Below are positions 36,497-56,811 of a DNA stretch of 64,000 nucleotides, one piece after another. The notes below the pieces were generated by a model. It made no database searches and was not told where the DNA came from. It worked only from the letters and a program-made list of their open reading frames with translations. This DNA comes from Macrostomum lignano (Eukaryota): positions 124,001 through 188,000 of the forward strand of contig NIVC01000691.1 of the NCBI GenBank assembly GCA_002269645.1. The letters run 5' to 3'. The position numbers were made by a program, and so were the translations under genes. The stretch's first letter is position 1; every line of letters begins with the position of its first letter.

Positions 36497-39400
36497 TCAC
36501 CGCTGCATCTGCTGCTGCATCTGCTTCAACATGTTCGTCATCTCGGACAATTGCTTCTTCGTTTTCCTTCTGTGCTTTCGCTGCCGTTGCCGAATTTCTT
36601 CAGTTTTTTCATTCAATTGAGTTTCAATTGAGTCTTTCAAGTGTGCCTCAATTCTTGCATTATCCTCTCTCTGAGCAGCTAGCACGTCCTGAGCCTGGTT
36701 CTCCACGTGTGCCTTGAGCACATCGGTGTCGCCCTTGTGCCTCTCCACAGGCCGCTGCAGCCGGGGCCGGTGCTCCCGCAGCCGTTTGGCCTGGTAAATC
36801 AGGAAACGCTTGTAGCCTTCTGGGTAGCCGCTGAAGTCTTTTTTGTTCTGCCACCACGGCTGGAGAGTCAAAAGTTTAGTGCACTTAGGTTTTTGTTTTA
36901 ACCAAAATTTCGTAAATGCATTCAGTCACCGAAACATACGCTTTATCATAGCCAAAGAAGACCTAGACGGGCCACTCAGTCAGCCAAAGGTACACTTTTG
37001 ATGTAAGCAGTACGATGTACGTTGTGAATATCGTGAATTTTTTATTCTAACTATAATGCCAAATCACATAAAGATTTAAGTAAGACTTTAATTTCATCGA
37101 CGATAAACCTAGCTGCTTCAAGCGTAATCAATCTTTTTAATAAATTGAGTTCCACAAAGTATAAGAAAATACGAAGAGCTTTTCCTATCCGAAATAAAGA
37201 AAAGTAACTTACTCTGCTTCTGTACACGAGAAAAGTCTGACTTGACAATATTGGCTAAGCTGTGGCCTTACCTCAGAACCGTCAGGTCCCACTCTGCCGG
37301 AGCGCCGCTCGCACCGACACCTCCGCAGCAGTTTCCAGGCGTAGTGCGGGAACGACAGCGGCGGCGGAACTGGACTGACCTCCGCGAACTCCCGCAGCAG
37401 CTCGAACAGATTCTTGCGCCACAGAACCTCCGCTCTGCTCGCCAACTTCGTCACAGTGCGGCTGAACAGCGCGATCAGCAGGTTCCACATCACGATGTTC
37501 ACCAGAAGGAGGTACACGAACATCAGAATTCCATCGTAAGCCCTTTTTCCTTCTTCATCCGCACAGGGCTTCTCATTTGGAAGGAAGTTCTTCCCAGTTG
37601 CGAGCGTGCCAGGATTGCAGGACTCGAAAATCACGCTTTCGAAGATCCCAAACGCCAGTGACACGGGTACGGTGAACACCTTTGTCAGAGCCTGAGCATC
37701 TCTTGAGTCTGAGAAAGCCGGAAACAGCAGGTTGAAGAAAAAGATACCAAATGAGTACACCAGCACCAGCAAGATCAATATGAATGGCAGCAGGTCTTTG
37801 AACAGCAAGCTTTTGAGCATATTGATCTTCGGCCCGGTGACTTTGAAGTAGCTGAGCAGGGCCACAGAGCGGAATCCCAGTAGCAGAAATGAGGCGCTGA
37901 GCACAACCTGACTGCTGCGTAGGAGGATGGGGCCGGTGAGCTCGCCGCGCAGCTTCAGGACCAGACCTGCCCACATCAGCAGCAGCCCAGCCATGTCAAA
38001 GTAGTTGAACAGGTCCGTGAAGTAGCCTGGAACCTTTAGATGGCGGCCAAAAATTGTCACGTCCTTCAGAGACATATTGTTTAGAAAATCATTGATTTCC
38101 TGCAGAGTGAAGGACAGTGCGTACGACAGCAGGATGATGTCTGGAACTGGAGACTGCTTGGTCCGACTGAAGTCCGTCACGTACCAGGCAAAGTAGAGCA
38201 GGAAGAGCAGGAAAGAGACGGCATGTATTACATATCTCTGCTGAATTGTTGCACCTTCAGGCCGCTTGCCGGTGCAGCAGTGCGGAGAGCTGCTCCAGGG
38301 CAACGGTGGAGGCTTTTTCCACTGCTGATCTACCAAATTGCTGATGCAGTCAGTCGCGAACAAGTCGTCACAGTCCAGAGTCTCCACAAGATGCATGACT
38401 GACACAAACTCTTTATCAACTTCATTTGAAGGCTTCTTCGCAGGTCGAGAAACGGATTCAATTGGTGGCAGAAACCTCGGCCCAGCAGCAGACTGTTTAC
38501 CTGAAGTACAAAACGAGCCAGTCAGGTAGTTGAAGAGATTTTTCCGATCATCTTCATCGCCATCAACATAGAGATGGTCCAGGATGTTGACGACAACATT
38601 CAACGCTCGAAATTGCACCTTCTGCATAGTTTCGCTTTTACTTGACCTGAAGTTCAGCTTTAAATAAATAAGCAACCTCAGGGTCTGAGGGATGATGTCG
38701 AATTGAGGCAGCAGCATGAGGTCGGTTAAAAGCTTTGGTTTCTCGAGCAGTATAGCATATTCCATAAGCACTAGGGTTTTTGAATTTCTGTCTCGCTCTG
38801 AGAAAAACTGCTGCAGAGTCGCTATTATGGGAGACTTTGAACCTTGCTGGTTTTTACGAATCTGGGTTAAAATATGAAGAGAAAACTGCTCATCAATCTC
38901 ATCGATGGCAAAGCCCAAACTGATCAAGCTGCGCAGCATTTCCGTTGAATCCAGCTCGAAGGCTCTGAACAGCATCTGAACTTCTGCAGATTCTTCAGAC
39001 TTTGGCATCATGCCAGCTTCTTGTCCTTTTTTCATGTCATCTTCAATGCTAGCCTTGAGCGAGGAGTCGTTGAACTGAGTCAAGTAATTCCGTGCACTCT
39101 GTTTGTCAGGAAGTTTGAGTGCCCTCTTTGCAACATCCACTAACTTAAGCAGTTCTCTAAGGGTAAATAGCTTCTTTTGAGGAGCTTCATTGATGTCATC
39201 TGCTAGCTCAATAAGAACTTCGAGCATCTCCTTGTTGCAGGCAAAATCTACGCACGTCTGTCCAGCTGCCGTCTCATCCTCCAGTTTCGCATCCTGCTGT
39301 AGAAGATATTTGATATTTTCTTTTTTGCCACATTCGCAGGCAAAGTGCAAACATTTCGCCTCTTTAAATGGACCGGTGGCGACTCGAACATCTAAAAGTT

Positions 39401-40946
39401 TTTCAAGACTGAGACCACAAAGCCTGCTTAACTCGTCTGCAATCATCGGAAGCTCGTACTTTGTGCAAAAAACGTGAGCCACGTGCAGACCTTCCGAGTT
39501 TCTTTGGAGGCTTTTAAAAACCTTTGCAAGAGAAGACGTCATAAGAGCGTCCAAAGCTTCTTTCAAGTTTATTTCACTGGCCACTGAAGCAAAAAGACAA
39601 TTATGCTTCTGCTTGTTTTCAGCTGCAGGATCAACGCCATTATCAACAAGGCATTGTATGCGATCGATGAGTAGCTGTAATCCATCTGAATCACAGAACG
39701 GGTTCAGATTTATGAACACTGCGTGCAACATACTATTGCCTTCAGAGTCCGTTTTAAAAAAATCAAACAAAACGTGTCGATCCTTATTTTGGACTCGATC
39801 CAATTCCAATAGCCATCGAAAAACATCTGGATGAGTACAATTGACAGCAGAAAGATAAAATTGGGTTTGCTGCAGATGATTATCAATAGTCAGACATTTT
39901 GTCAACTCAAATTTCTCGATTGGGGAACTCAGTGTTGTTGTATTTTGATGGCGAAAAGCGATATGCAAAGCATTATTTCCATCAATATCACGATTAAAGA
40001 ACTGCTGCTTGTCCTCGACAATGTCAATGAGCCACAGAAACACTGCCGGGTTTGCCGTGTTAAAAGCTGCTCTGTGCAAGACACTTTGATTTTTAGCAGT
40101 TTTTGCAGCCAGGCACTGCTTCAGACCGAGCTTCTCAGTCACTTGTTGTAGTGTGTCTAAATCTAGAAAAGAAAATGCATCGCTAACAGCGCTGTATCCG
40201 AAATCGTCCAGAACAAAGAACTGCTGCTTGTCCTCGACAATGGAACTGAGCCACAGAAACACTGCCGGATTTGCCGTGTTAAAAGCTGCCCTGTGCAAGG
40301 CGCTTTCGTTTTTAGCTGTTTTAGCAGCCAGGCACTGCTGAAGACCGAGCTTTTTGGTCACTTCTTTTAAAGTGGCTAAATCTAGAATAGAAAATGCAAT
40401 GCTAACAGCGCTGTAGCCGTAATTGTCCAGAGCAAAGAACTGCTGCTTGTCCTCAACAATGGCAATCAGCCACAGAAACACTGACGGTTTCGCCGTGTTG
40501 AAAGCTGCCCTGTGCAAGACACTTTGTTTTTTAGCAGTTTTTGCAGCCAAGCACTGCTGCAGACCAAGCTTCTCAGTCACTTGTTGTAGTGTGTCTAAAT
40601 CTAACTTCAAAAACGCAGCGCTAACAGCGCTGTACCCATAATCGTTCAAAAAAAAGAACTGCTGCTTGTCCTCAACAATGGAAAGGAGCCACAAAAGCAC
40701 TGCCGGATTCGCAGCATTTAAAGCTGCTCTGTACAAGACAGTTTCATTTTTTGCAGTTTTTGCTGCCAGACACTGTTGCAGACCAAGCTTGTCAGTCACT
40801 TCTTTTAATGTGATCAAATCCAGCTTCTCAAATGCAATGCTAACAGCACTGAAGCCGCCATAGTCCTGAGCAAAGAACTGCTGCTTGTCCTCGACAATGG
40901 ATATGAGCCACAGAAACACTTCTGGACTAGCCTTCCGGAAAGCTGC
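36497..40946 (-). pseudogene. Ankyrin-repeat TRP cation channel, 3' part (exon 40946-37272, last exon 36859-36497), disrupted by the LTR insertion
   Basis: 73-aa repeats plus ankyrins, six TM helices, S4-S5 GPKINML...KDLLPF, S6 NIVMWNLLIALFS, TRP helix W...PVPPPL, and a coiled-coil last exon joined by GAG|gtaagg...ccag|CCG. Confidence 0.9.
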
Positions 40947-41749
40947 TGTGACGTTGTCAGTTTAAGGTGGTCCCGGAAAGGGCCGTTGGACTGCTGTTTT
41001 CCATAGTCATTCAACCCTTCAGTTTCACCGCTTCGACTAAACTTTTCCATTCGTTTATTGCGACGTTTACTTGTAGTAATGCCCAACGATTTTGTGGCAA
41101 TTTCTAACTCACTGTATATTTTTGCTATCCTCTCTTGCGACCGTATAAAATTGGCACGATCGATAATTTTAAGTTCTCTCGCCAGCCAATGAAAACCACT
41201 CGTGCTTCGCGCTACCCCCCTCTGCGCTCCTTTATTAAACCCCCGCCTGGCGGCGGGCACTCCTCACTCCTGTCCTTATCGGTGCTTCTCTCTTCCTCCC
41301 GGCCTGTCCTTGGCCTTGTGTGTGTCTTTACGGCCTTGTTTTCCTTCTCTCTGTCTGGCTGCCTCGAGCCTCCTTGCCTCACGCCACGACTGACGCCAAC
41401 TTCGCCACTGCTCATCTGCCTACTACGTTTCACTGCCTTCACTGTGCTCATAGCCACTGCTCACGTCATGTCGCCATTACATCACTCGTCTGTCGCTTGA
41501 ACACTCATCCGATTTATCTTGAAAGAAACCATTGTTGCAGCCGCCAGTGCCCAGAAAACCATAGTTTGTTATTTGCCAGTAACAACCAAACTTACTATTT
41601 ATACTGATAATAAAAACGACTACGGCAGTTTCCTGCCCTTATTGCCAAGTGCTCCGCTACACCATCCACTTCGCCTAAGTTGACTTCAACTTATTTTGGG
41701 ACTAAAACGGCCCTTTTAAGGGTCACGGCCAACGTCAAATAACGTGACA
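40947..41749 (+). repeat. 5' LTR (803 bp)
   Basis: TGTGACGTT...AACGTGACA. By eye identical to the 3' LTR except for one C in a homopolymer. Confidence 0.97.
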
Positions 41750-41755
41750 TAATTT

Positions 41756-41772
41756 TGGAGGTCCCACCGAGA
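41756..41772 (+). promoter_or_regulatory. Primer binding site, tRNA-Gln
   Basis: TGGAGGTCCCACCGAGA is complementary to the 3' end of eukaryotic tRNA-Gln (...TCTCGGTGGGACCT-CCA). It lies 6 nt after the LTR. Confidence 0.85.
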
Positions 41773-41774
41773 CT

Positions 41775-42085
41775 CCTGCTCAGCACTGCCGGCTCGCAAC
41801 TAAATCAGTGCCATCAAGACTTCTGTTCAGCGCTGCCAACTCGTAATCAGCACCACCGAGACTTCTGCTCAGCCCTGCCAGCTCGCAACCAAGCGTCAGC
41901 AAGATTCTGCTCAGCTCTGCCGGCTCGTGACTGAGTGCCGGCCTGCCACGTTTCTGCCTGACGGTCCGCAAGGCTGCGAGAGCCTGTGCCACGCCTGAGG
42001 TTCGGTCCGCAAGGCTACGAGAGCCTGTGCCACGCCTGAGGTTCGGTCCGCAAGGCTGCGAGAGCCTGTGCCACGTCAGGCCCAG
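41775..42085 (+). repeat. Tandem repeats in the Gypsy 5' leader (degenerate ~45-50-bp units, then a 41-bp unit x2.5)
   Basis: ctgctcagc..tgcc.gctcg units; gagcctgtgccacgcctgaggttcggtccgcaaggct repeated. Confidence 0.75.
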
Positions 42086-42682
42086 GGGTCCTGACTGCTC
42101 GGCCGGTCTTCGCTCGTCGCCGCGAGTCGTCGCTGGTCGTCGCCCTGAGCAACGCGCGCTGTCAACTGCGTTGAGCTCGAGCTTACGCTCTGCCAAGATA
42201 GCTCCGCTGCGTGTGCCAAGCCACGCCAGGTTACGCTGTGCGCTGATTGTTTGTAGGGACTATTGCCTGACAGTTAGTCTGGGTGGTTTGCGTGATAGGA
42301 CTCTCCCCTATTATAGGCTTTTTGCGGTTTGCCCCTGTCAGGCACGTATTTTGTTAGTAGGACGCAATCTCTCTCGTCTCTCTCGCGTCATCAACCTCAA
42401 TTCGCTTTCTCTGGAGCCTTATTTTCGTTCACGCTTGATTCATTTGTCTCACTCAACCTTACACAATGTCCGACAACGGGGGGGCAAACGGCAACTTAAA
42501 CCGAGGGACTCTGTGACATCCGCCAGCTTTTCGTTTTTCGAGGAGGCTCTTCCCCCTCCTTTTCGTTCTGGCCTGGCGTGGAAGCGGCTAGCTTCCTCGT
42601 CTTGGTCTGCTGGTGGGGGACGGATCCCCCCTGCTGCTTTTTTGCGGGGCAGGTGGCTGCTAAGTAGTTGGCTGCTGGCTAA

Positions 42683-47767
<5,085 letters not shown>

Positions 47768-47853
47768 TCCTTGTGCTCTTTTACCTTGGGGTTGCGATAG
47801 GGGCCTCGCGGCCTATTCGCGGCGCCTGCGCCCCCCGTCAGTAGTAAGTTAGT

Positions 47854-50800
47854 ATGTCCGACAACGGGGACAACCATGCCGCAGCGTCATTGGCTGACGG
47901 AGATGCCGTCGTGCCAGATCAGGACGCAGTCGATGCCGGCGAGCAGCCAGCAGGCGCAGCTGCTGCCGCCGCGCCAGCTCCTAGTGAGCAACTCTTGTTG
48001 ACTCAAACCTTAGCCTCTCTTCACCGGATGCTCGAAGAGCGTCTCGCTGTTTCCTCGCCGTCAGCGCCAAATTCCTCGCCGCCTGCGAAGCCAGACATAC
48101 GCCTTCGCCCTCCAATCGCTTATCAGCCGAAGATGAACTTTGACACGTGGGAAGCTCAGCTTACTTCGTATCTAGCCACTTGCCGCGTTCCTGAGGACCA
48201 GAAGTCCGCCATTCTCGTATCTTTGCTGTCAGCCGAATGCCAAGAGGTATATCTTAATTACCGGTGTGACCAGTTGCCTTTCGAATCTGCGCTTCGGCTG
48301 CTCAGAGAAAGGTACACCGATGCCAAGAAGAAGGACAAGGCCTACGTAGAATTAGTTGCTGCCGCCCAATCTCATAATGAGCAGATGTCTGATTTCTTCG
48401 ACAGACTGGTCTCCTATTCTAGACTAGCGGGTCTCTCGCTCGCTGAAGCGAAGCCCCTACTCAAGGCCAGATTCTGCCATGGGCTGAGGGATAAGGACCT
48501 CGCCGAAAAGCTCCTCTTATGGGATCAGGAAACCGACAGTGCCACCTCTGCAGAAGAGCTGATGCAGAAGGCCAAAGATCTTGTCGGGGTCCGCCAGCTT
48601 CTGAACGTGCCTTCTACTATAGCCAAGGTCCGTGCCATAGAACCTGACGCTGAGAAGAAAGCGTTAGAACAGAGGGTCGCCGAGCTTGAGAAGATGGTGA
48701 CCGACCAAGCCAATAGATTAAGCCAGACCACTCCGCCTGTCACTACCAATCAGGGGCCCGCTCGCACAGAGCCCACTGGGGGCCCACCACAAGTTAGCCA
48801 AACCTATAGACAACCTAGGCCAGCTCCTCGCCCTCCGCGGGCTTGCCATCGATGTGGCCAGACCGATCACCTGATCGCTGACTGTCCATCGCCCTCGCCG
48901 AGGCCACAGTCGCCAAAGCAGCCCCGGGGGAGCCAAAATCAGCAGCCCAGCCGTGGAAAAGTCACGACTGAACTAGGAACCATTGCCACATGGTCTCAGA
49001 ATTACGGGTTCATCCAATCTGAGCACCTGCCAGAGAAATTGTTCGTTCACATTAGCCAACTGTCTCCCAGCCTGCGTAGCCTAGTCGAGCGACACCGCCT
49101 TAGGGGGACTAGGGTGAAATTCCAGCGCCAGGTCGACCCCGGGCGCCAGCACGACAAGGCCTGTAATGTGCAACCTCAGCCAGGGGACAGTGATCCACAA
49201 TGCCGACAAGGGGGGTACACAGCTGACACCTTTGAGTCTAGCTATTTCGTGCAGCTAGGAGTAGGAGACTCTAAAGTTCTGGCCTGTCTAGACTCAGGCG
49301 CCAATGCCAGCATCATGGGTGCTGACGTGAAAGCCAAACTGGTCGCAGCTGACCCCGTCAATAACATATTCACGCCTAGTGCCAATAAGCAGCGTGCCAC
49401 CGCCTTCGGCGGCTCTCAGGTAGACATCCTAGGGTCGCTACGCTGCGAAATCAATTTAGGTAATACGACTAAACAACACGTATTCTTAGTCACTGCTTAC
49501 TGTACCACGGAAGCCCTGTTAGGCATGGATTTCCTGCGCAGCTTCGAGATGCTGCTAGACTTCAACTCTGGCCGAGCTTTAGTAGCAGGGGTGTCAGTAC
49601 CAGTCATTGAGGGGGACAAGGGGATTTTCCAACTCCGACGAGTGATGGCCGCCGGCACCGTAGAATTGCCCCCGCACTCGGAAACCTTGATCCCCAGTCG
49701 TGCCCTCGACTCTTCGCCGTACACCTCCGGTATAGTCATGTCCCGGATCCTCGGACCAGAGACCGAACAGTTGGTAGCCAAGACTCTAGACTCAGTTAGC
49801 GATACTAACCACATACTAGTGCGCGTGCTCAACAGTGGGGAACAGCCTATTCAGATAACTAGGGGGCAAGAAATTGCCTCATTCCAGGAATTAGATAGTC
49901 ATGAGGTCATAGCTCAGACGACCCTGAAGGAGTCTGACTTTAGCCTGGACAATGTAGCTAACCTCACCAGCCAACTCAGTAAGCTGCCACCGCCTAGTAG
50001 GGAGTTAGCCAAATGGCTGACAACGCAGTTCCAACTAGACCAAGCCAAATTGTCTAGGGGCCAACTCGCCACCGTTTTGAAACTGCTCAACTACTTCAAT
50101 AGCCAAATTTCGAGATCAAACGCAGATTTAGGCCACACCAATTTACACGAGATGGGCATAGAGTTAATAGATCCTAAGGCCAAGCCTGTTGCGCAACCAT
50201 ACAGGCGCACCACGCCAGCACAAAAAGAATTCTTAGACCAGAACATAGCGCAGATGCTCGAACAGGGGGTCATTGAGGAGTGTGACTCTGACTGGGTGTC
50301 GCCTATCGTTCTGGTCAAGAAGAAGGACGGCACTCAACGCCTTTGCATAGACTATAGGGCCGTCAATAAGCTCATCAAGCCGTGTAGCTTCCCTCTGCCA
50401 CTCATAGAAGAATCTTTTGACAGCCTTGCCGGGGCCACTGTATTCTCTAGCCTTGACCTGACCTCCGCGTACTGGCAGGTAGGGATCAAAGAGGAGGCTA
50501 GAGATTACACCGCCTTTGCCTGCCCCCAAGGCACCTTCCGCTGGAAGGTAGTACCATTCGGGATCAAGACGGCACCTGCCAATTTCGCGAAACTGATGCA
50601 CAAGGTGTTTAGACCTCTCCTGATGAAGGTCAGCCTCATCTATTTAGACGACATTATCATTAAGGCTGTCAACAGTGACCAAATGATCGCGCATCTCGCG
50701 CTGGTCCTCTGGCAGCTTAGAAAAGCCGGTCTCAAAATTAAGCCGTCTAAGTGTGAGCTGTTTAAGGACAAGGTCGCATTCCTGGGGTTCGTTGTGTCTA

Positions 50801-53619
50801 GCCGGGGCATTGAGGCTGACCCAGCGAAGACTCAGGCTGTCCAAGACTGGCCTAAACCGCTTTCTAAGAAACAGCTTCTATCATTCTTGGGATTTGCGAA
50901 TTATTACCGGAAATTCGTGCCGCGATTCTCAATCATCGCCACGCCTTTGTATGCCTTAGCCAAAAAGGATGCTCCGTTTCTATGGCAACCGCATCATGAA
51001 CGGGCTTTCCAAGAACTCAAACATAGCCTCTGTTCACCACCGATTCTGGCGTATCCAGACCTCTCTGCCAAAGGGCGCGAATTTATTTTGGACTGCGATA
51101 GCTCGCTTGACGGCACTGGGGGTGTGCTGTACCAGCTCGGGCCAGATGGCCAAGAGCAAGTTATAGCTTACGCATCCAAAAAATTCAACAGTAGCCAGAG
51201 GAACTACTGCGCCACCATGAGGGAGTTGCTAGGGCTCGTTCTGATGCTCGAGCATTTCCGTCCTTACCTATTAGACAAGCCTTTCACTGTCCGGGTGGAC
51301 GCGGCCGCGCTCAAATGGCTGCATTCTAAGAAGCATGCCACTGGTATGCTGGCCCAATGGCTTGCCACCATTGAACTGTACCCGCTGAAGGTCCAGCAGT
51401 CCACTCTAGAACGAATAGCCGAATACGATTTCACAGTCCAGTACCGTCCAGGCGTTGACCACGTGCCTGCTGACGCTCTTAGTAGACTGCCAAAATTCAG
51501 AGCCGATCACTTTGACTGCCCGACGTGCAGCCAGATTCCGGAATTTAAAGGGAAATTCCTGGACCACGACCCAAAGCACCGGCGCACGCCCCCCTCTAGA
51601 GAACTGCGTCAGGTGTGCGTCCAGACCATAGGCATTAGCGTAGCGTGTCAGACTGACACAGATGCCCCGGCTGAACCAACGCCGAATGTCCGCGCTACTG
51701 CTAGCGGTGCTGTTCCTAGCCCAGAGACTGAATCCCGTCAACCTGAAACCGAATCCCAAGTGCCACCTGAGCTCATCTGGGCCCAGAATGCCCAGGACTC
51801 CTGTGTTGACATGGCGCGCCTAATCGCCAGTGTCCAGTGTAAGACTGAGCCATTGTCCAAGGCCGAACTGCAGGGTTGTAGCCGGGAAATGCGCTCACTC
51901 TGGGCTCAATTCAATGACCTTGAAGTAGTCGAGGGTCTATTGTACTTAGCCAAATCCTCCAAAGCCAAGACTGCCAACAGGCGCCTGGTGGTGCCTGAGA
52001 CCGCAGACGTCGGTCATCTGGTCCTTCAGTATCATGGCCAGTTGAACCATTGCGGTATCACCAAGACGATGGCCGCCCTGAAGGCGCGCTTCGTTATTTC
52101 CGACTTAGATACTATAGTCAAGGGGGTCCTGGCCGAATGCACCGTTTGCGCTAAGACTAAGAAGTCAAAGCGTAAGCTCAAGGCCCCTATGCAACCAGAA
52201 CTGTCCGGCTACCCGAACCAGGTTGTCCACGTGGACCACGCAGGCCCGTTCGAAGAGTGTGACGGGTACAAGTACCTGCTGGTTATGATCGACAGGTTCA
52301 CCGGGTTTGTTGAAGTAGTCCCTGTCCCCGACGTCAGCGCAGAGACCACTGCCACAACCATCCTGACTGAATGGGTTGCCAGGTATGGGGTGATGGAGCA
52401 GCTGGTGTCTGATAACGGAACTGCCTTCATCAATAGTACCATGATAGAATTAGCTAGGCTCCTACAGATTGACATGGGTCGGATCACCGCCCGTCGCCCT
52501 CAGGCTAACGGTAAAGCTGAGAGGATGATCCAGACGGTGAAAGCCCAGATTAGAGCCATCTGCCTTGAGAGACAATGCGACTGGCCCCTTGCCAGCCGCC
52601 TGGCCGCCCTGTCAATCCGTGCCACAGTCGCCGAATCCACCGGATTTACTCCAGCCAAACTTTTCTTCGGGCGTGAGTTCGAACTACCGCTCGACCTCTG
52701 TCACAACCCACCGCCAAATGAACACTACCAGCCGGAGAGGTACGCCCACCAGTTGCACCGCACGCTAGTCGAAACCTCTGCCCTAGCCCGCCGCACTAGG
52801 GGTAAAGCCCAGGAAAGGCAGAAAAGGTATTACGACCGCCGCGCCCTCCGCGCTGAGTTCCACGAGGGAGAGTTAGTCTGGGTCTTGAACCCGAATCACA
52901 AGGGCATAGAACCCGCTGTGTGGTTGGGGCCATACCGAGTAGTGCAGCGCTGCTCCGAGCGGACTTACCGTTTAGTCCCCGAGTATGGTCTCCTAAACCC
53001 AGCAGATCGGGTGCCAAATCCGCGCCATAACATTTACAACATTGACCGCCTCAAACCGTGCATCAGACAGCCCACTTACCAAGACGTAGTTGACCGGTAT
53101 GGTGAGGCCACCCATGCCAGGTCTCCAGCGCCTAGTGTGAACCCGCCCAGCGGGCCCGCGAGCGAGCTTAGCCTCGTCACCATTCCCCAGCCTTCCTCTG
53201 CCCGGCCAGAGAGCCCACGCAGAGCGCCAGGGCCAAATCCACCACCGCCAGCTTCAGGCGCCTTTGAGGAGGGGGCGGGAGCTGAAGCGGGAGAAGGCCA
53301 ACCATTCGCCGAAGCTGGCGATGCTGTAGCTATTGAGGGACAGCCACAACCAGACACTGACACTGACAGCACAGACACTGACACCAGCCACAGCCAAGAC
53401 AGCTCAGAGTCGCTGTACACGGCTTCCTTGGGGGACCCTTCCTCCGAGCAAATAGAACCACCTGAGATTGCTGCGAATCCAGTCGCTGCGCAAGCAGCTG
53501 AGCCACCAGCCCCGGCTGACGTACCCAGATCCAGGTACGGACGCCCCATCCGCCCGCCTGTCAGGTACCGGACCTGTCAAGTGTCCGACCTGCTCCAGCA
53601 GTGGGGAAGCAGACACTAA
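47854..53619 (+). CDS. Gypsy Gag-Pol polyprotein, a single uninterrupted 1921-aa ORF, with a cold-shock domain
   Basis: Gag, CCHC at 48844-48885, CSD at ~48976-49173, protease LDSGA at 49291, RT YLDD at 50641, RNase H (DCDSS, ELLG, ADALSR), integrase HHCC/DDE, GPY at 52927, acidic Pro-rich tail. Confidence 0.96.
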   Translation: MSDNGDNHAAASLADGDAVVPDQDAVDAGEQPAGAAAAAAPAPSEQLLLTQTLASLHRMLEERLAVSSPSAPNSSPPAKPDIRLRPPIAYQPKMNFDTWEAQLTSYLATCRVPEDQKSAILVSLLSAECQEVYLNYRCDQLPFESALRLLRERYTDAKKKDKAYVELVAAAQSHNEQMSDFFDRLVSYSRLAGLSLAEAKPLLKARFCHGLRDKDLAEKLLLWDQETDSATSAEELMQKAKDLVGVRQLLNVPSTIAKVRAIEPDAEKKALEQRVAELEKMVTDQANRLSQTTPPVTTNQGPARTEPTGGPPQVSQTYRQPRPAPRPPRACHRCGQTDHLIADCPSPSPRPQSPKQPRGSQNQQPSRGKVTTELGTIATWSQNYGFIQSEHLPEKLFVHISQLSPSLRSLVERHRLRGTRVKFQRQVDPGRQHDKACNVQPQPGDSDPQCRQGGYTADTFESSYFVQLGVGDSKVLACLDSGANASIMGADVKAKLVAADPVNNIFTPSANKQRATAFGGSQVDILGSLRCEINLGNTTKQHVFLVTAYCTTEALLGMDFLRSFEMLLDFNSGRALVAGVSVPVIEGDKGIFQLRRVMAAGTVELPPHSETLIPSRALDSSPYTSGIVMSRILGPETEQLVAKTLDSVSDTNHILVRVLNSGEQPIQITRGQEIASFQELDSHEVIAQTTLKESDFSLDNVANLTSQLSKLPPPSRELAKWLTTQFQLDQAKLSRGQLATVLKLLNYFNSQISRSNADLGHTNLHEMGIELIDPKAKPVAQPYRRTTPAQKEFLDQNIAQMLEQGVIEECDSDWVSPIVLVKKKDGTQRLCIDYRAVNKLIKPCSFPLPLIEESFDSLAGATVFSSLDLTSAYWQVGIKEEARDYTAFACPQGTFRWKVVPFGIKTAPANFAKLMHKVFRPLLMKVSLIYLDDIIIKAVNSDQMIAHLALVLWQLRKAGLKIKPSKCELFKDKVAFLGFVVSSRGIEADPAKTQAVQDWPKPLSKKQLLSFLGFANYYRKFVPRFSIIATPLYALAKKDAPFLWQPHHERAFQELKHSLCSPPILAYPDLSAKGREFILDCDSSLDGTGGVLYQLGPDGQEQVIAYASKKFNSSQRNYCATMRELLGLVLMLEHFRPYLLDKPFTVRVDAAALKWLHSKKHATGMLAQWLATIELYPLKVQQSTLERIAEYDFTVQYRPGVDHVPADALSRLPKFRADHFDCPTCSQIPEFKGKFLDHDPKHRRTPPSRELRQVCVQTIGISVACQTDTDAPAEPTPNVRATASGAVPSPETESRQPETESQVPPELIWAQNAQDSCVDMARLIASVQCKTEPLSKAELQGCSREMRSLWAQFNDLEVVEGLLYLAKSSKAKTANRRLVVPETADVGHLVLQYHGQLNHCGITKTMAALKARFVISDLDTIVKGVLAECTVCAKTKKSKRKLKAPMQPELSGYPNQVVHVDHAGPFEECDGYKYLLVMIDRFTGFVEVVPVPDVSAETTATTILTEWVARYGVMEQLVSDNGTAFINSTMIELARLLQIDMGRITARRPQANGKAERMIQTVKAQIRAICLERQCDWPLASRLAALSIRATVAESTGFTPAKLFFGREFELPLDLCHNPPPNEHYQPERYAHQLHRTLVETSALARRTRGKAQERQKRYYDRRALRAEFHEGELVWVLNPNHKGIEPAVWLGPYRVVQRCSERTYRLVPEYGLLNPADRVPNPRHNIYNIDRLKPCIRQPTYQDVVDRYGEATHARSPAPSVNPPSGPASELSLVTIPQPSSARPESPRRAPGPNPPPPASGAFEEGAGAEAGEGQPFAEAGDAVAIEGQPQPDTDTDSTDTDTSHSQDSSESLYTASLGDPSSEQIEPPEIAANPVAAQAAEPPAPADVPRSRYGRPIRPPVRYRTCQVSDLLQQWGSRH

Positions 53620-54209
53620 CCGCCAGTTTTTCACGCCCCGGGCAAGGCGTAAAACTACCTCCTGTGGCACCTGTCAGCCACAGGTCTCTGCGGCACCTGT
53701 AGACCGCAAGCTCACGCCCCGGGCAAGGCGTAAAACTACCTCCTGTGGCACCTGTTGGTCACAGGTCCCTGCGGCATCTGCCAGCCGCAAGCCACAAAAC
53801 ACAAGCCACAGCTGTTAATCACTGCCAGATACTAGTGTGCACAATTTCCACAGCTGTACCAGCCAACAGCCAACCACCGTAGTCAAGGGGATAAACTGCA
53901 GCGGCATTGCAATTTGATAATTTATATAGCTAACTAAAATAAATAAAATAAAAATAAAACACTAGCAGAATTAGCATAATATGCCGACAGTATAAATACT
54001 ATATTGTTCTAACGCAAGAATATATATAATATCGCAGCACCCAACTCCGACTGCACCTGGTCGGCGTTGCCGTAGTCTATAGAATACACTACGGCGCTAG
54101 AAACAAATAGTAGATAAGACATTAGCCTTAGCTCAAATATTCAAAAGTAAACTAAAAAATTAATGCACAAGTATGGCATAAAATAATGCATATTTTGGTC
54201 GAAAAATGA

Positions 54210-54539
54210 TTACGAGATGAATACTATAAATATAATAGTTGTCAAAATATTCTGTAGACGTCCTCTGCCTGCATCGGCGTTGCCATAATCGATAAAATAC
54301 ACTAGGGCACGTATAAACATTATAGCAATGGCAAAAATGATTAAAATAATTGATAGCAATGGCACCCGTTCGGTGTTGCCAAAGTCGATGAAATGAATAA
54401 GTGCGTCATCTCTGACGCTAATAGTAATACCCCGAAACCATGTAATGTGCAATATACGGTTAGTAATTAAAGCATAACTACTGGCGACTAGTGAAACGCA
54501 TAAATAACTCAAAAAGGAAAATAAAAACTGAAAAAACAA
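54210..54539 (-). other. Antisense AT-rich ORF containing Tudor-domain motifs; a third motif lies at 54054-54096
   Basis: WFRGITISVRDDALIHFIDFGNTERVPL, ALVYFIDYGNAD and AVVYSIDYGNADQV. Confidence 0.6.
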
Positions 54540-54582
54540 CCATTGAAAACTCGAGAAAAATATTCTGCCTATAAGAATATAG

Positions 54583-55302
54583 CTAGCTTAGTTCGCTGCT
54601 CAGCCCATTGACGAGTGCAGCATCGCTTTCGCTGTTGTCGGAAATGAGCTGTAGCTCGTCATTAAATTTCGCAAATTTCATAATGTAGCTAGATATATAT
54701 AATTCTTGTGGGGTAAAAGTAAGCACTACACACACACACACCGCACGCACGCTCTCTCTGCCTTTGGCGCGTAGCGCCATCCTCTGCCTCTGGCGCGTGG
54801 CGCCACCCTCTGCCTGGCGCGTGGCGCCGTCCTCTGTTTGGCGCGTGGCGCCGTTCCCGCGTGGCGCCCTTGCGCCGTTTCCTGCCTTGGCGCGTGGCGC
54901 CGTCCCTGCCTGGCGCGCTGCGCCGTCTTTGCCTTGGCGCGCTGCGCCGTCTCCGCCTGGCGCGCTGCGCCGTCTCTGCCTTGGCGCGCTGCGCCGTGTC
55001 TCCGCCTTGGGCGCTCTTGCGCCGGGTTCTCCCTTCCGCCTTGGCGCGCCGCGCCGTGTCCCGCCGCCCTTGACGCTTGGCGTCGTTTGCCCGCAGTTGT
55101 CCGGACTGTGTCTCTGTGCCGTGCCTCTGCTCTGCATCCTTTGCCTCATCCATCTGTCATCCTTGTTCTGTGTTTGCCTCATCCATCGTATCACTTCTGC
55201 GCGTCCTTTGTCGTTTTTGTGTTCGCGCGCGCCGCGCGCTCCGTCGTGCACTACTTTCCGTAACCATTGTTGTATTTTGTAATGTTTTTGTAACACCACC
55301 AT
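54583..55302 (-). CDS. Antisense 239-aa Arg/Gly/Ala-rich ORF in the Gypsy 3' region (coding status uncertain)
   Basis: ATG-initiated. The middle is encoded by a ~23-bp GC repeat array; the termini are non-repetitive. Confidence 0.35.
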   Translation of the reverse strand: MVVLQKHYKIQQWLRKVVHDGARGAREHKNDKGRAEVIRWMRQTQNKDDRWMRQRMQSRGTAQRHSPDNCGQTTPSVKGGGTRRGAPRRKGEPGARAPKAETRRSAPRQRRRSAPGGDGAARQGKDGAARQAGTAPRAKAGNGARAPRGNGATRQTEDGATRQAEGGATRQRQRMALRAKGRESVRAVCVCVVLTFTPQELYISSYIMKFAKFNDELQLISDNSESDAALVNGLSSELS

Positions 55303-55533
55303 GTTGTATTGCTCGTGCTCACCGTGTTCTACTGCCCTGTAATGTTCTGCTCTCGTAATAGTCTGTAGCCGTTGGAACTTTGTAATTTTGTCCGGTAATC
55401 ATATGCTCATACAAACTGACTCAATCCCACTATAATTCACTCTGCTATAATTTCATAAACTGCGGTTACGATGTGTTTTCCTTGCCGTCACCCCGCGTGT
55501 TGGTTTTCTTTTTGCGCGACCCTATCCTTTTTC

Positions 55534-55547
55534 GGAAGGGAGGCGGG
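55534..55547 (+). promoter_or_regulatory. Polypurine tract
   Basis: GGAAGGGAGGCGGG directly abuts the 3' LTR TG. Confidence 0.85.
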
Positions 55548-56351
55548 TGTGACGTTGTCAGTTTAAGGTGGTCCCGGAAAGGGCCGTTGGACTGCTGTTT
55601 TCCATAGTCATTCAACCCTTCAGTTTCACCGCTTCGACTAAACTTTTCCATTCGTTTATTGCGACGTTTACTTGTAGTAATGCCCAACGATTTTGTGGCA
55701 ATTTCTAACTCACTGTATATTTTTGCTATCCTCTCTTGCGACCGTATAAAATTGGCACGATCGATAATTTTAAGTTCTCTCGCCAGCCAATGAAAACCAC
55801 TCGTGCTTCGCGCTACCCCCCTCTGCGCTCCTTTATTAAACCCCCCGCCTGGCGGCGGGCACTCCTCACTCCTGTCCTTATCGGTGCTTCTCTCTTCCTC
55901 CCGGCCTGTCCTTGGCCTTGTGTGTGTCTTTACGGCCTTGTTTTCCTTCTCTCTGTCTGGCTGCCTCGAGCCTCCTTGCCTCACGCCACGACTGACGCCA
56001 ACTTCGCCACTGCTCATCTGCCTACTACGTTTCACTGCCTTCACTGTGCTCATAGCCACTGCTCACGTCATGTCGCCATTACATCACTCGTCTGTCGCTT
56101 GAACACTCATCCGATTTATCTTGAAAGAAACCATTGTTGCAGCCGCCAGTGCCCAGAAAACCATAGTTTGTTATTTGCCAGTAACAACCAAACTTACTAT
56201 TTATACTGATAATAAAAACGACTACGGCAGTTTCCTGCCCTTATTGCCAAGTGCTCCGCTACACCATCCACTTCGCCTAAGTTGACTTCAACTTATTTTG
56301 GGACTAAAACGGCCCTTTTAAGGGTCACGGCCAACGTCAAATAACGTGACA
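55548..56351 (+). repeat. 3' LTR (804 bp)
   Basis: Direct repeat of 40947-41749. Confidence 0.97.
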
Positions 56352-56811
56352 CTGCTCTGTGCAAGACACTTTGATTTTTAGCAGTTTTTGCAGACAGGCA
56401 TTGCTGAATACCAAGATTATTGGTCACTTCTTTTAAAGTGGCTAAATCTAGAGTAGAAAATGCAATGCTAACAGCGCTGTAGCCGTAATTGTCCAGAGCA
56501 AAGAACTGCTGCTTGTCCTCGACAATGGAACTGAGCCACAGAAACACTGCTGGGTTTTCCGCGTTGAAAGCTGCCCTATGCAAGACACTTTCATTTTTAG
56601 CAGTTTTATCAGCCAGGCACTGCTGCAGACCGAGCTTCTCAGTAACGTTTTTTAGTGTGTTTAAATCGAGCTTTTCAAAAGCATTGCTAACAGCACTACT
56701 CCCGTCTTTGCTCAGAGCAAAGAACTGCTGCTTGTCCTCCTCAGTGGCAATGCGTGACAGAAACTCTGAACCTTCGACGATGGATGTAGTGGAACTAAAT
56801 ACTTGGTCCAT
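56352..56811 (-). pseudogene. 5' part of the same TRP channel exon (MDQVFSS...SVLHRA)
   Basis: Same 219-bp repeats. Removing 40947-56351 and one CTGC restores LHRA-AFRKASPEVFLW in frame with ORF 37209-40919 (about 1497 aa in total). Confidence 0.9.

What the first reader, a model, noticed from the sequence alone, without database searches (positions are those of the whole stretch)
54050..54440. Gypsy element carries three antisense Tudor-domain motifs in its 3' region: candidate anti-piRNA device
Seen: on the minus strand, three GC-richer islands inside AT-rich spacer translate to WFRGITISVRDDALIHFIDFGNTERVPL (54440-54358), ALVYFIDYGNADA (54311-54271) and AVVYSIDYGNADQV (54096-54054). All three are in one frame, with TAA/TGA stops before the third. 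Motifs 2 and 3 differ mostly at synonymous positions (atc/ata, gat/gac, tat/tac, gat/gac). Established: WYRA...V-x-F-x-D-Y/F-G-N-x-E-x-V is the aromatic-cage signature of extended Tudor domains of TDRD/Tudor piRNA-pathway proteins. Drosophila TART-A captured part of the piRNA gene nxf2 and yields piRNAs against it. Inference: the element's genomic RNA is antisense to these snippets, so small RNAs made from it could silence host Tudor mRNAs. Alternatively an antisense transcript encodes Tudor decoy peptides. I know of no description of this in a Gypsy element.
Basis: partly seen in the sequence, partly recalled or inferred. Interest (0 to 1): 0.92.

Follow-up and report, generated by a model that had tools for sequence, protein, structure and literature searches.

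The report
Tudor-gene relics in flatworm Gypsy element
A young, active Gypsy retrotransposon of the flatworm Macrostomum lignano carries, backwards in its 3' untranslated tail, four short leftovers of a Tudor-domain coding sequence; they are real and sit in every copy examined, but nothing found here shows that they work as a weapon against the host's piRNA defence.

Summary
On the minus strand at 54440-54054 there are three islands, plus a fourth decayed one at 53905-53870. They translate to the W-F-R-G ... [FY]-I-D-[FY]-G-N core of germline (TDRD/Tudor) Tudor domains. Pfam TUDOR scores 23.4 bits. An independently built eTudor HMM ranks the three islands first in the whole six-frame window and above all 100 shuffles.

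The islands lie between the pol stop (53619) and the 3' LTR (55548) of a 15.4-kb Ty3/Gypsy element of Macrostomum lignano. All nine other copies fetched carry the segment (one only in part), at about 96-99% identity. Two sister families lack it.

Only 33 of 206 domain positions are present. There is no usable ORF, and the frame relation between islands breaks in one copy. No known protein is more than about 52% identical to island 1.

The best reading is passenger relics of a Tudor-domain gene carried in the 3' UTR. Decoy peptides are very unlikely. The small-RNA "anti-piRNA" idea could not be tested here, because neither the host genome nor small-RNA data were searchable. Weak hints of constraint keep it alive at low probability: mostly synonymous differences between islands, and 1 of 16 polymorphisms inside islands (p=0.05).

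The parts
40943..40946 (.). Target-site duplication CTGC, left copy (right copy at 56352-56355)
   Evidence: the flanks read ...gctgc|TGTGAC and GTGACA|ctgct...
40947..41749 (+). 5' LTR, 803 nt (804-column alignment with the 3' LTR), TG...CA ends
   Evidence: 99.9% identical to 55548-56351; termini
41756..41772 (+). Primer-binding-site-like TGGAGGTCCCACCGAGA just inside the 5' LTR (inferred; not matched to a tRNA)
   Evidence: sequence after the LTR
42482..47853 (+). Nested non-LTR (LINE) retrotransposon specific to this copy, with RT and RNase H. It is flanked by a 16-nt duplication ATGTCCGACAACGGGG (42466-42481 and 47854-47869).
   Evidence: (absent from five other copies)
47854..53619 (+). 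Intact gag-pol ORF of 1921 aa: PNMA-like Gag, CCHC knuckle, cold-shock domain, protease, RT, RNase H, integrase
53631..53792 (+). 81-nt tandem repeat (2 copies) at the start of the 3' untranslated region
53796..54745 (-). AT-rich block that holds the Tudor-like islands. It has no terminal inverted repeats and no Rfam match.
   Evidence: present in other copies
53870..53905 (-). Island 4, decayed: AAVYPLDYGG, in a different frame
54054..54095 (-). Island 3: AVVYSIDYGNADQV (eTudor HMM positions 103-119). It lies in a 37-codon ATG ORF (54122-54009) and forms a hairpin.
54270..54308 (-). Island 2: ALVYFIDYGNADA (eTudor HMM positions 104-115)
   Evidence: Y->N in copy L004
54357..54440 (-). Island 1: WFRGITISVRDDALIHFIDFGNTERVPL (eTudor HMM positions 90-122; Pfam TUDOR 68-97 of 121)
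54555..54660 (-). GC-normal variable block with two haplotypes among copies (about 24% different, plus indels). Its small ORF MKFAKFND... (54681-54583) is not conserved.
54755..55024 (+). GC-rich tandem repeats of 24/47/96 nt
55534..55547 (+). Polypurine tract GGAAGGGAGGCGGG abutting the 3' LTR
55548..56351 (+). 3' LTR

Best explanation
The islands are short relics of germline-type (TDRD/Tudor) Tudor-core coding sequence. They lie antisense in the roughly 1.9-kb 3' untranslated region of a young, active Ty3/Gypsy family of Macrostomum lignano.

Shown:
- They belong to the family's standard structure, not to one copy.
- They are absent from two sister families.
- They cover only the beta-strand stretch around W-[YF]-R and [FY]-I-D-[YF]-G-N.
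- They have no usable reading frame.

Inferred:
- The founder of the family acquired sequence from one or more Tudor-domain genes. The route is unknown: a DNA-level or template-switch capture, or a decayed antisense accessory gene.
- The pieces now ride along as passenger sequence.
- They make no Tudor protein, so any effect would have to act at the RNA level, and none is demonstrated.
For: Element anatomy:
- The LTRs are 99.9% identical and end in TG...CA. There is a CTGC duplication, a polypurine tract and an intact 1921-aa gag-pol.
- The source is M. lignano contig NIVC01000691.1.

Distribution:
- The Tudor segment is present at 98.7-99.3% identity in five other copies and in four more, of which L010 holds it only in part.
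- It is absent from the 3' regions of the sister families that are 58% and 56% identical in Pol.

The Tudor homology is real but partial:
- Pfam scores 23.4 bits over profile positions 68-97 of 121.
- The independent eTudor HMM hits positions 90-122, 103-119 and 104-115 of 206. No other part of the domain is found anywhere in the window or in about 280 kb of fetched loci.
- phmmer finds 371 proteins at E<=1e-3. All 16 that carried a source name, out of 20 looked up, are large multi-Tudor-type proteins, many named tudor or TDRD.

No coding capacity:
- Stops lie between the islands, and islands 1 and 2 have no upstream ATG.
- Island 4 is out of frame, and island 3 is out of frame in L009.
- No minus-strand gene is annotated there in any copy.

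No close relative:
- The best single-domain identity is 48-52%.
- The word-based search found nothing.
Against: - The D-[YF]-G-N core is intact in three separate islands, while everything around them is AT-rich and not homologous between units. Uniform neutral decay would not obviously give that pattern.
- Differences between islands are biased towards synonymous sites. I2 against I3 has 4 synonymous and 2 non-synonymous changes (pS 0.49, pN 0.07, p about 0.03), and pS exceeds pN in all six pairs.
- Among ten copies, only 1 of 16 mutational events in 53850-54480 falls in the islands, where 4.2 are expected (one-sided p=0.052).
- The donor gene and the capture mechanism are not identified.
Confidence: 0.6

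Rival explanations
1. Anti-piRNA small-RNA device. The abundant sense RNA of the element is antisense to the most conserved stretch of host germline Tudor mRNAs. Sense-strand piRNAs or siRNAs from the islands would therefore trans-silence TDRD genes. The islands' codon variants would cover different host paralogues.
For: - The orientation is right, and the islands are in every copy examined of an active family.
- M. lignano makes sense-strand transposon piRNAs that take part in ping-pong (PMC4604429).
- There is a precedent: TART-A captured part of nxf2 and yields piRNAs against it (PMC7785250).
- Differences between islands are biased towards synonymous sites, and polymorphism inside the islands is low.
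Against: - No nucleotide match to a host gene could be shown.
- No protein in 1.84 billion representatives is more than about 52% identical to island 1, and a word search of 5.8 billion proteins found nothing.
- The islands are only 36-84 nt. At about 50% amino-acid identity there is no 20-nt complementarity.
- The statistical hints are weak (p 0.03-0.05 on very few sites). Derivation from paralogous domains explains them equally well.
Confidence: 0.08
2. Decayed antisense accessory gene. An ancestor of the family encoded an intron-containing Tudor-domain gene on the minus strand of its 3' region. Antisense introns survive retrotransposition. The islands are its surviving exon pieces.
For: - GC-normal islands of 60-85 nt sit in an AT-rich matrix with abrupt borders.
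- Some borders look like splice sites, for example tttctag|CGCC and CCAG|gtgcag around island 3.
Against: - The same beta3-beta4 motif recurs at spacings of 96, 213 and 193 nt, which is not how consecutive exons of one Tudor domain would read.
- Most borders lack GT/AG.
- The one host intron examined has GC 0.45, not 0.2-0.3.
- The sister families have no such gene.
- No other part of the domain is detectable.
Confidence: 0.12
3. Antisense micropeptides or 'Tudor decoy' peptides. Short ORFs on the minus strand would be translated and would compete for methyl-arginine ligands: 37 aa MSYLLFVSSAVVYSIDYGNADQ... and 36 aa MFIRALVYFIDYGNADA...
For: Two ATG-started ORFs of 36-37 codons each contain a DYGN island.
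Against: - A Tudor core needs about 60 residues and five strands. These peptides carry 10-14 motif residues, followed by hydrophobic tails translated from AT-rich sequence.
- Island 1, the best Tudor match, has no ATG.
- L004 has Y->N in island 2.
- No annotated transcript exists and no matching predicted protein was found.
Confidence: 0.03
4. A cis-acting nucleic-acid element of the retrotransposon, such as repeated binding sites or hairpins in the 3' UTR, whose translation resembles Tudor only by coincidence.
For: - An 11-mer GGCAAC(A/G)CCGA is shared by islands 1-3.
- Island 3 folds into a stable hairpin (z=-3.8 on the + strand).
Against: - Islands 1 and 2 do not fold better than shuffles, and there is no Rfam match.
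- The W-F-R-G at the correct spacing and the HMM score, far above the shuffles, are hard to get by coincidence.
- Differences between islands fall at third codon positions.
Confidence: 0.05

Closest known systems
TART-A capture of nxf2 in Drosophila melanogaster (PMC7785250)
   Same: A retrotransposon carries sequence from a piRNA-pathway gene in its untranslated region. The captured piece is found in the dispersed copies. The proposed effect is that element-derived piRNAs hit the host gene.
   Different: In TART-A the homology is at the nucleotide level over a long stretch, with 17 differing positions in the shared region. The piRNAs and degradome cleavage products were observed. Here there are only four motif-sized islands of 36-84 nt. 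No host match is known, no small-RNA data are available, the element is an LTR element rather than non-LTR, and the host is a flatworm.
LTR retrotransposons that carry host gene fragments, for example maize Bs1 (recalled from memory, not checked here)
   Same: Non-autonomous pieces of cellular coding sequence inside an LTR element, copied along with it.
   Different: Those cases carry contiguous exon-derived fragments with clear nucleotide identity to the donor genes. Here the same short motif recurs in non-homologous AT-rich spacers, and the donor is unknown.
Extended Tudor (eTudor) domains of Tudor, TDRD1, TDRD6 and TDRD15
   Same: The W-[YF]-R-[AG] and [FY]-[IV]-D-[YF]-G-N-x-[ED]-x-V motifs, at the right spacing. 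The best database hits are these proteins.
   Different: Only 33 of about 206 domain positions are present, with no ORF. This is a fragment, not a domain.
Antisense extra ORFs in the 3' regions of plant Ty3/Gypsy elements (recalled from memory)
   Same: Location and strand: between pol and the 3' LTR, on the minus strand.
   Different: Those are long ORFs conserved across copies. Here there is none.

Membership tests
Ty3/Gypsy LTR retrotransposon (the carrier) | Direct LTRs with TG...CA ends, flanked by a short target-site duplication | tested here: met
   804-column LTR alignment, 99.9% identical; CTGC duplication
Ty3/Gypsy LTR retrotransposon (the carrier) | Pol domain order protease - RT - RNase H - integrase, with a polypurine tract before the 3' LTR | tested here: met
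   (Pfam positions along the 1921-aa ORF)
Tudor / eTudor domain (Pfam PF00567) | Sequence match to the family profile at or above the curated cut-off | tested here: inconclusive
   23.4 bits against a cut-off of 23 for the 76-aa piece holding two islands. Island 1 alone scores 17.2 bits and the whole frame 21.8 bits. The match is still clearly above chance.
Tudor / eTudor domain (Pfam PF00567) | A complete domain: about 60-aa five-strand core, about 180 aa with the SN-like extension | tested here: not met
   Only HMM positions 90-122 of 206 (Pfam 68-97 of 121) are found. Nothing else appears in the window.
Tudor / eTudor domain (Pfam PF00567) | An open reading frame that could express it | tested here: not met
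   stops between islands and no ATG before island 1; the frame is not kept in L009.
Counter-defence by captured host piRNA-gene sequence (TART-A/nxf2 type) | Nucleotide-level homology to a host piRNA-pathway gene | not testable with these tools
   The host genome and transcriptome are not searchable. Indirect protein-level searches found no close relative.
Counter-defence by captured host piRNA-gene sequence (TART-A/nxf2 type) | Fragment present in the active copies and absent from related lineages (acquired) | tested here: met
   all nine other copies, L010 in part; sister families lack it
Counter-defence by captured host piRNA-gene sequence (TART-A/nxf2 type) | Small RNAs from the fragment antisense to the host mRNA, with cleavage or down-regulation of the host gene | not testable with these tools
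   No small-RNA or degradome data are available. PMC4604429 shows only that the pathway exists in this species.
Antisense accessory ORF of LTR retrotransposons | A long minus-strand ORF conserved among copies | tested here: not met

The most novel reading that the evidence does not exclude
The islands are selectively maintained mimics of the most conserved stretch of several host germline Tudor/TDRD mRNAs. Sense-strand piRNAs or siRNAs from this abundant Gypsy RNA would trans-silence those genes. That would be an LTR-retrotransposon counter-defence against the piRNA pathway in a flatworm. It would be analogous to TART-A/nxf2, but multi-target and built from motif-sized pieces.
Probability: 0.07. 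Interest if true: 0.85.

Novelty: new member of a known kind. Interest (0 to 1): 0.36.

Why it matters
If the islands are only relics, this is one more case of a retrotransposon carrying scraps of a cellular gene. Its use would be mainly as a marker for the history of this M. lignano Gypsy family.

If they turn out to pair with host Tudor mRNAs and to yield small RNAs, it would be only the second kind of transposon known to aim at the piRNA machinery. It would also be the first LTR element and the first case outside insects. The question can be settled cheaply with data that already exist: the Mlig_3_7 genome and transcriptome, and the small-RNA libraries of PMC4604429.

Tried and rejected
- **Chance.** Rejected by motif counts against shuffles and by an independent HMM against 100 shuffled windows and about 280 kb of other M. 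lignano loci.
- **A copy-specific insertion.** Rejected, because the segment is in all nine other copies, L010 in part. The copy-specific insertion is in fact the LINE at 42482-47853.
- **A fuller Tudor domain split over exons.** Joining the upstream small ORF or downstream pieces to island 1 lowered the Pfam score rather than raising it. tblastn with 150 multi-Tudor proteins found only the islands.
- **A nested transposon carrying the block.** There are no terminal inverted repeats.
- **A shared RNA structure.** Only island 3 folds well, and Rfam finds nothing.
- **Homology between the spacers (decayed tandem units).** Not detectable.
- **Finding the donor gene.**
  - The word-based protein search gave one candidate, and none scored E <= 10.
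  - The representative search returned generic multi-Tudor proteins from cnidarians, molluscs, arthropods and others, with no flatworm among the 20 looked up.
  - The third homologous-protein search was not spent. Any profile broad enough to reach M. lignano Tudor proteins would be swamped by Tudor proteins of other animals.
- **A selection test among copies.** The family is too young, about 99.4% identical. The result is suggestive only. The raw p=3.6e-6 is an artefact of a divergent haplotype block at 54555-54745 in two copies.
- **An intermediate relative.** P0002 is 69% identical in the integrase part but is not on record with DNA.

Full report
**What is there**

- WFRGITISVRDDALIHFIDFGNTERVPL at 54440-54357
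- ALVYFIDYGNADA at 54308-54270
- AVVYSIDYGNADQV at 54095-54054

All three are in one frame, with TAA and TGA stops before the third. A fourth, decayed unit (AAVYPLDYGG, about 53905-53870) lies in another frame. The islands have GC 0.40-0.63, in a matrix of GC 0.13-0.30.

The motif [FYS][IVL]D[YF]GN occurs three times in the six-frame translation of the 64-kb window. All three are here, and block shuffles give none. The window's only W[YF]R[AG] sits at the proper distance upstream of island 1.

**Is it Tudor?**

Pfam TUDOR matches the 76-aa piece that holds islands 1 and 2 at E=6.7e-5 and 23.4 bits (cut-off 23). Only profile positions 68-97 of 121 are matched. The whole minus frame gives 21.8 bits.

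The only PDB chains that phmmer returns are eTudor proteins (7cfd, and TDRD1 4b9w/4b9x), but at E about 1.

A 37-residue peptide around island 1 finds 371 proteins at E<=1e-3 among 1.84 billion representatives. I looked up 20 of them. Sixteen carry a source name and come from large multi-Tudor-type proteins, many named outright: Hydra TDRD6, amphioxus TDRD15, and 'maternal protein tudor' of abalone, sawfly and sponge. The other four are unnamed ENA or Logan predictions. Those very small E-values sum many weak repeats in each protein, so they overstate the case.

As a cleaner test I built a 206-position eTudor HMM from 1495 domains of those proteins, seeded from a sawfly Tudor domain and not from the islands. 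In the whole six-frame window its three best hits are the three islands: 14.5, 0.1 and -0.2 bits, at HMM positions 90-122, 103-119 and 104-115. The best hit in 100 block-shuffled windows is 4.1 bits. In about 280 kb of other M. lignano loci, the only hits above 0.5 bits are the same islands in other copies of the element.

The Tudor similarity is therefore real. It covers about 33 of 206 positions, and no other part of the domain is present.

**Where it sits**

The window is Macrostomum lignano contig NIVC01000691.1. The carrier is a Ty3/Gypsy element at 40947-56351 with these features:
- LTRs that align over 804 columns at 99.9% identity, with TG...CA ends.
- A CTGC target duplication.
- A PBS-like TGG... 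site just after the 5' LTR.
- A polypurine tract before the 3' LTR.
- An intact 1921-aa gag-pol with protease, RT, RNase H and integrase.

The element interrupts a host ankyrin/ion-channel gene built of 219-nt repeats.

This copy also holds a nested LINE at 42482-47853, flanked by a 16-nt duplication. The other copies lack it.

The islands lie in the 1.9-kb stretch between the pol stop (53619) and the 3' LTR (55548). Their neighbours there are an 81-nt tandem repeat and GC-rich 24/47-nt repeats.

**Other copies and relatives**

The Pol protein cluster has 13 members, about 99.3-99.7% identical apart from one at 98%. Nine further copies were fetched. All carry the Tudor-like segment:
- Five match 53860-54470 at 98.7-99.3%.
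- Over the whole AT-rich block, most copies are 98.5-99.4% identical. L002 (92.5%) and L009 (96.3%) are lower, mainly because of the divergent block described below.
- L010 holds only 362 nt of the segment.

Two sister families (58% and 56% Pol identity; loci L007 and L008) have unrelated 3' regions without any such motif. The segment was therefore acquired on the lineage leading to this family. It spread because the founder had it, so its presence in every copy is not in itself evidence of function.

**Can it encode anything?**

- Islands 1 and 2 share a 109-codon stretch with no ATG upstream of island 1.
- The only ATG-started ORFs are 36-37 codons long. Each holds a DYGN motif followed by a hydrophobic tail.
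- Island 4 is out of frame, and in L009 island 3 is out of frame with islands 1 and 2.
- L004 has Y->N in island 2.
- The small upstream ORF (MKFAKFND...) exists in two versions about 24% apart, with indels and different stops.
- No minus-strand gene is annotated there in any copy.

A folded Tudor domain or a decoy peptide is very unlikely.

**Hints of constraint**

Three weak hints keep a functional reading alive:
- The units share only their 36-46-nt cores, and their flanks are not detectably homologous.
- Differences between islands favour synonymous sites. I2 against I3 has 4 synonymous and 2 non-synonymous changes (pS 0.49, pN 0.07, p about 0.03), and pS exceeds pN in all pairs.
- Among ten copies, 1 of 16 mutational events in 53850-54480 falls in the islands, against 4.2 expected (p=0.052).

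The first two points fit pieces drawn from different paralogous Tudor domains that diverged under protein-level selection in a host gene. They fit ongoing selection equally well. The numbers are too small to decide between these.

**The piRNA idea**

M. lignano has ping-pong piRNAs, including sense-strand transposon piRNAs (PMC4604429). TART-A/nxf2 is a real precedent (PMC7785250). The idea needs nucleotide complementarity to host Tudor mRNAs, and I could not test that.

Indirectly, two searches lean against it. The closest single Tudor domain in the representative library is 48-52% identical to island 1, at 39 bits. The word-indexed search of 5.8 billion proteins returned nothing. These searches would have revealed a near-identical annotated donor. 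They cannot exclude short perfect matches of 8-9 codons.

No shared RNA fold or Rfam family explains the islands.

**Verdict**

The best-supported reading (about 0.6) is passenger relics of Tudor-domain coding sequence in the 3' UTR of a young Gypsy family. The rivals are a decayed antisense accessory gene (about 0.12) and the small-RNA counter-defence (about 0.08). It is a new instance of a known kind of thing, namely transposons carrying scraps of cellular genes. The exciting reading is unlikely, but it can be tested cheaply with existing data.

Noticed in passing
window 42466-47869: A 5.4-kb non-LTR retrotransposon (RT and RNase H ORF at 44757-47546) is inserted 16 nt into the gag ORF, with a 16-nt duplication ATGTCCGACAACGGGG. 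The duplication leaves an intact ATG at 47854. The public gene model spans 42466-53619, apparently treating the LINE as an intron.
   Followed up: partly
window 48976-49176 (gag-pol residues 375-441): The Gag region carries a cold-shock domain after the CCHC knuckle (Pfam CSD, 28.6 bits against a cut-off of 27). The two sister families show no CSD hit, so this family may have taken up cellular sequence more than once. phmmer against PDB sequences found nothing at E<=0.01.
   Followed up: partly
window 37209-40946 and 56352-56811: The element sits inside the 219-nt (73-aa) tandem-repeat region of a host ankyrin-repeat/ion-transport (TRP-like) gene. With LTRs 99.9% identical, the insertion is very recent and probably disrupts that gene copy.
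   Followed up: no
window 40947-41749, compared with the LTRs of L002-L006: The internal region is 99.4% identical between copies. This copy's LTR, however, is only about 95% identical (first 320 nt) and about 84% identical (last 300 nt) to the LTRs of the other copies. That suggests LTR subfamilies or recombination.
   Followed up: no
window 54555-54745; L002 and L009: A block just upstream (minus-strand sense) of the Tudor islands exists as two haplotypes about 24% apart with indels, while the adjacent island region is near-identical. This mosaic points to recombination between subfamilies.
   Followed up: partly
window 54069-54095: Island 3 contains a near-perfect 12-nt inverted repeat (GCCGTAGTCTAT / ATACACTACGGC). 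The predicted hairpin has z=-3.8 on the + strand. Islands 1 and 2 have no counterpart.
   Followed up: yes
window 41761-42084: The 5' untranslated leader of the element holds 41-nt and roughly 47-nt tandem repeats whose copy number varies between copies.
   Followed up: no
protein P0026 (Hydra vulgaris TDRD6-like; not in the window): The best database hit matches island 1 with the identical 29-aa segment seven times, at a spacing of about 212 aa. This shows how recently duplicated Tudor repeats can look inside a host gene.
   Followed up: no
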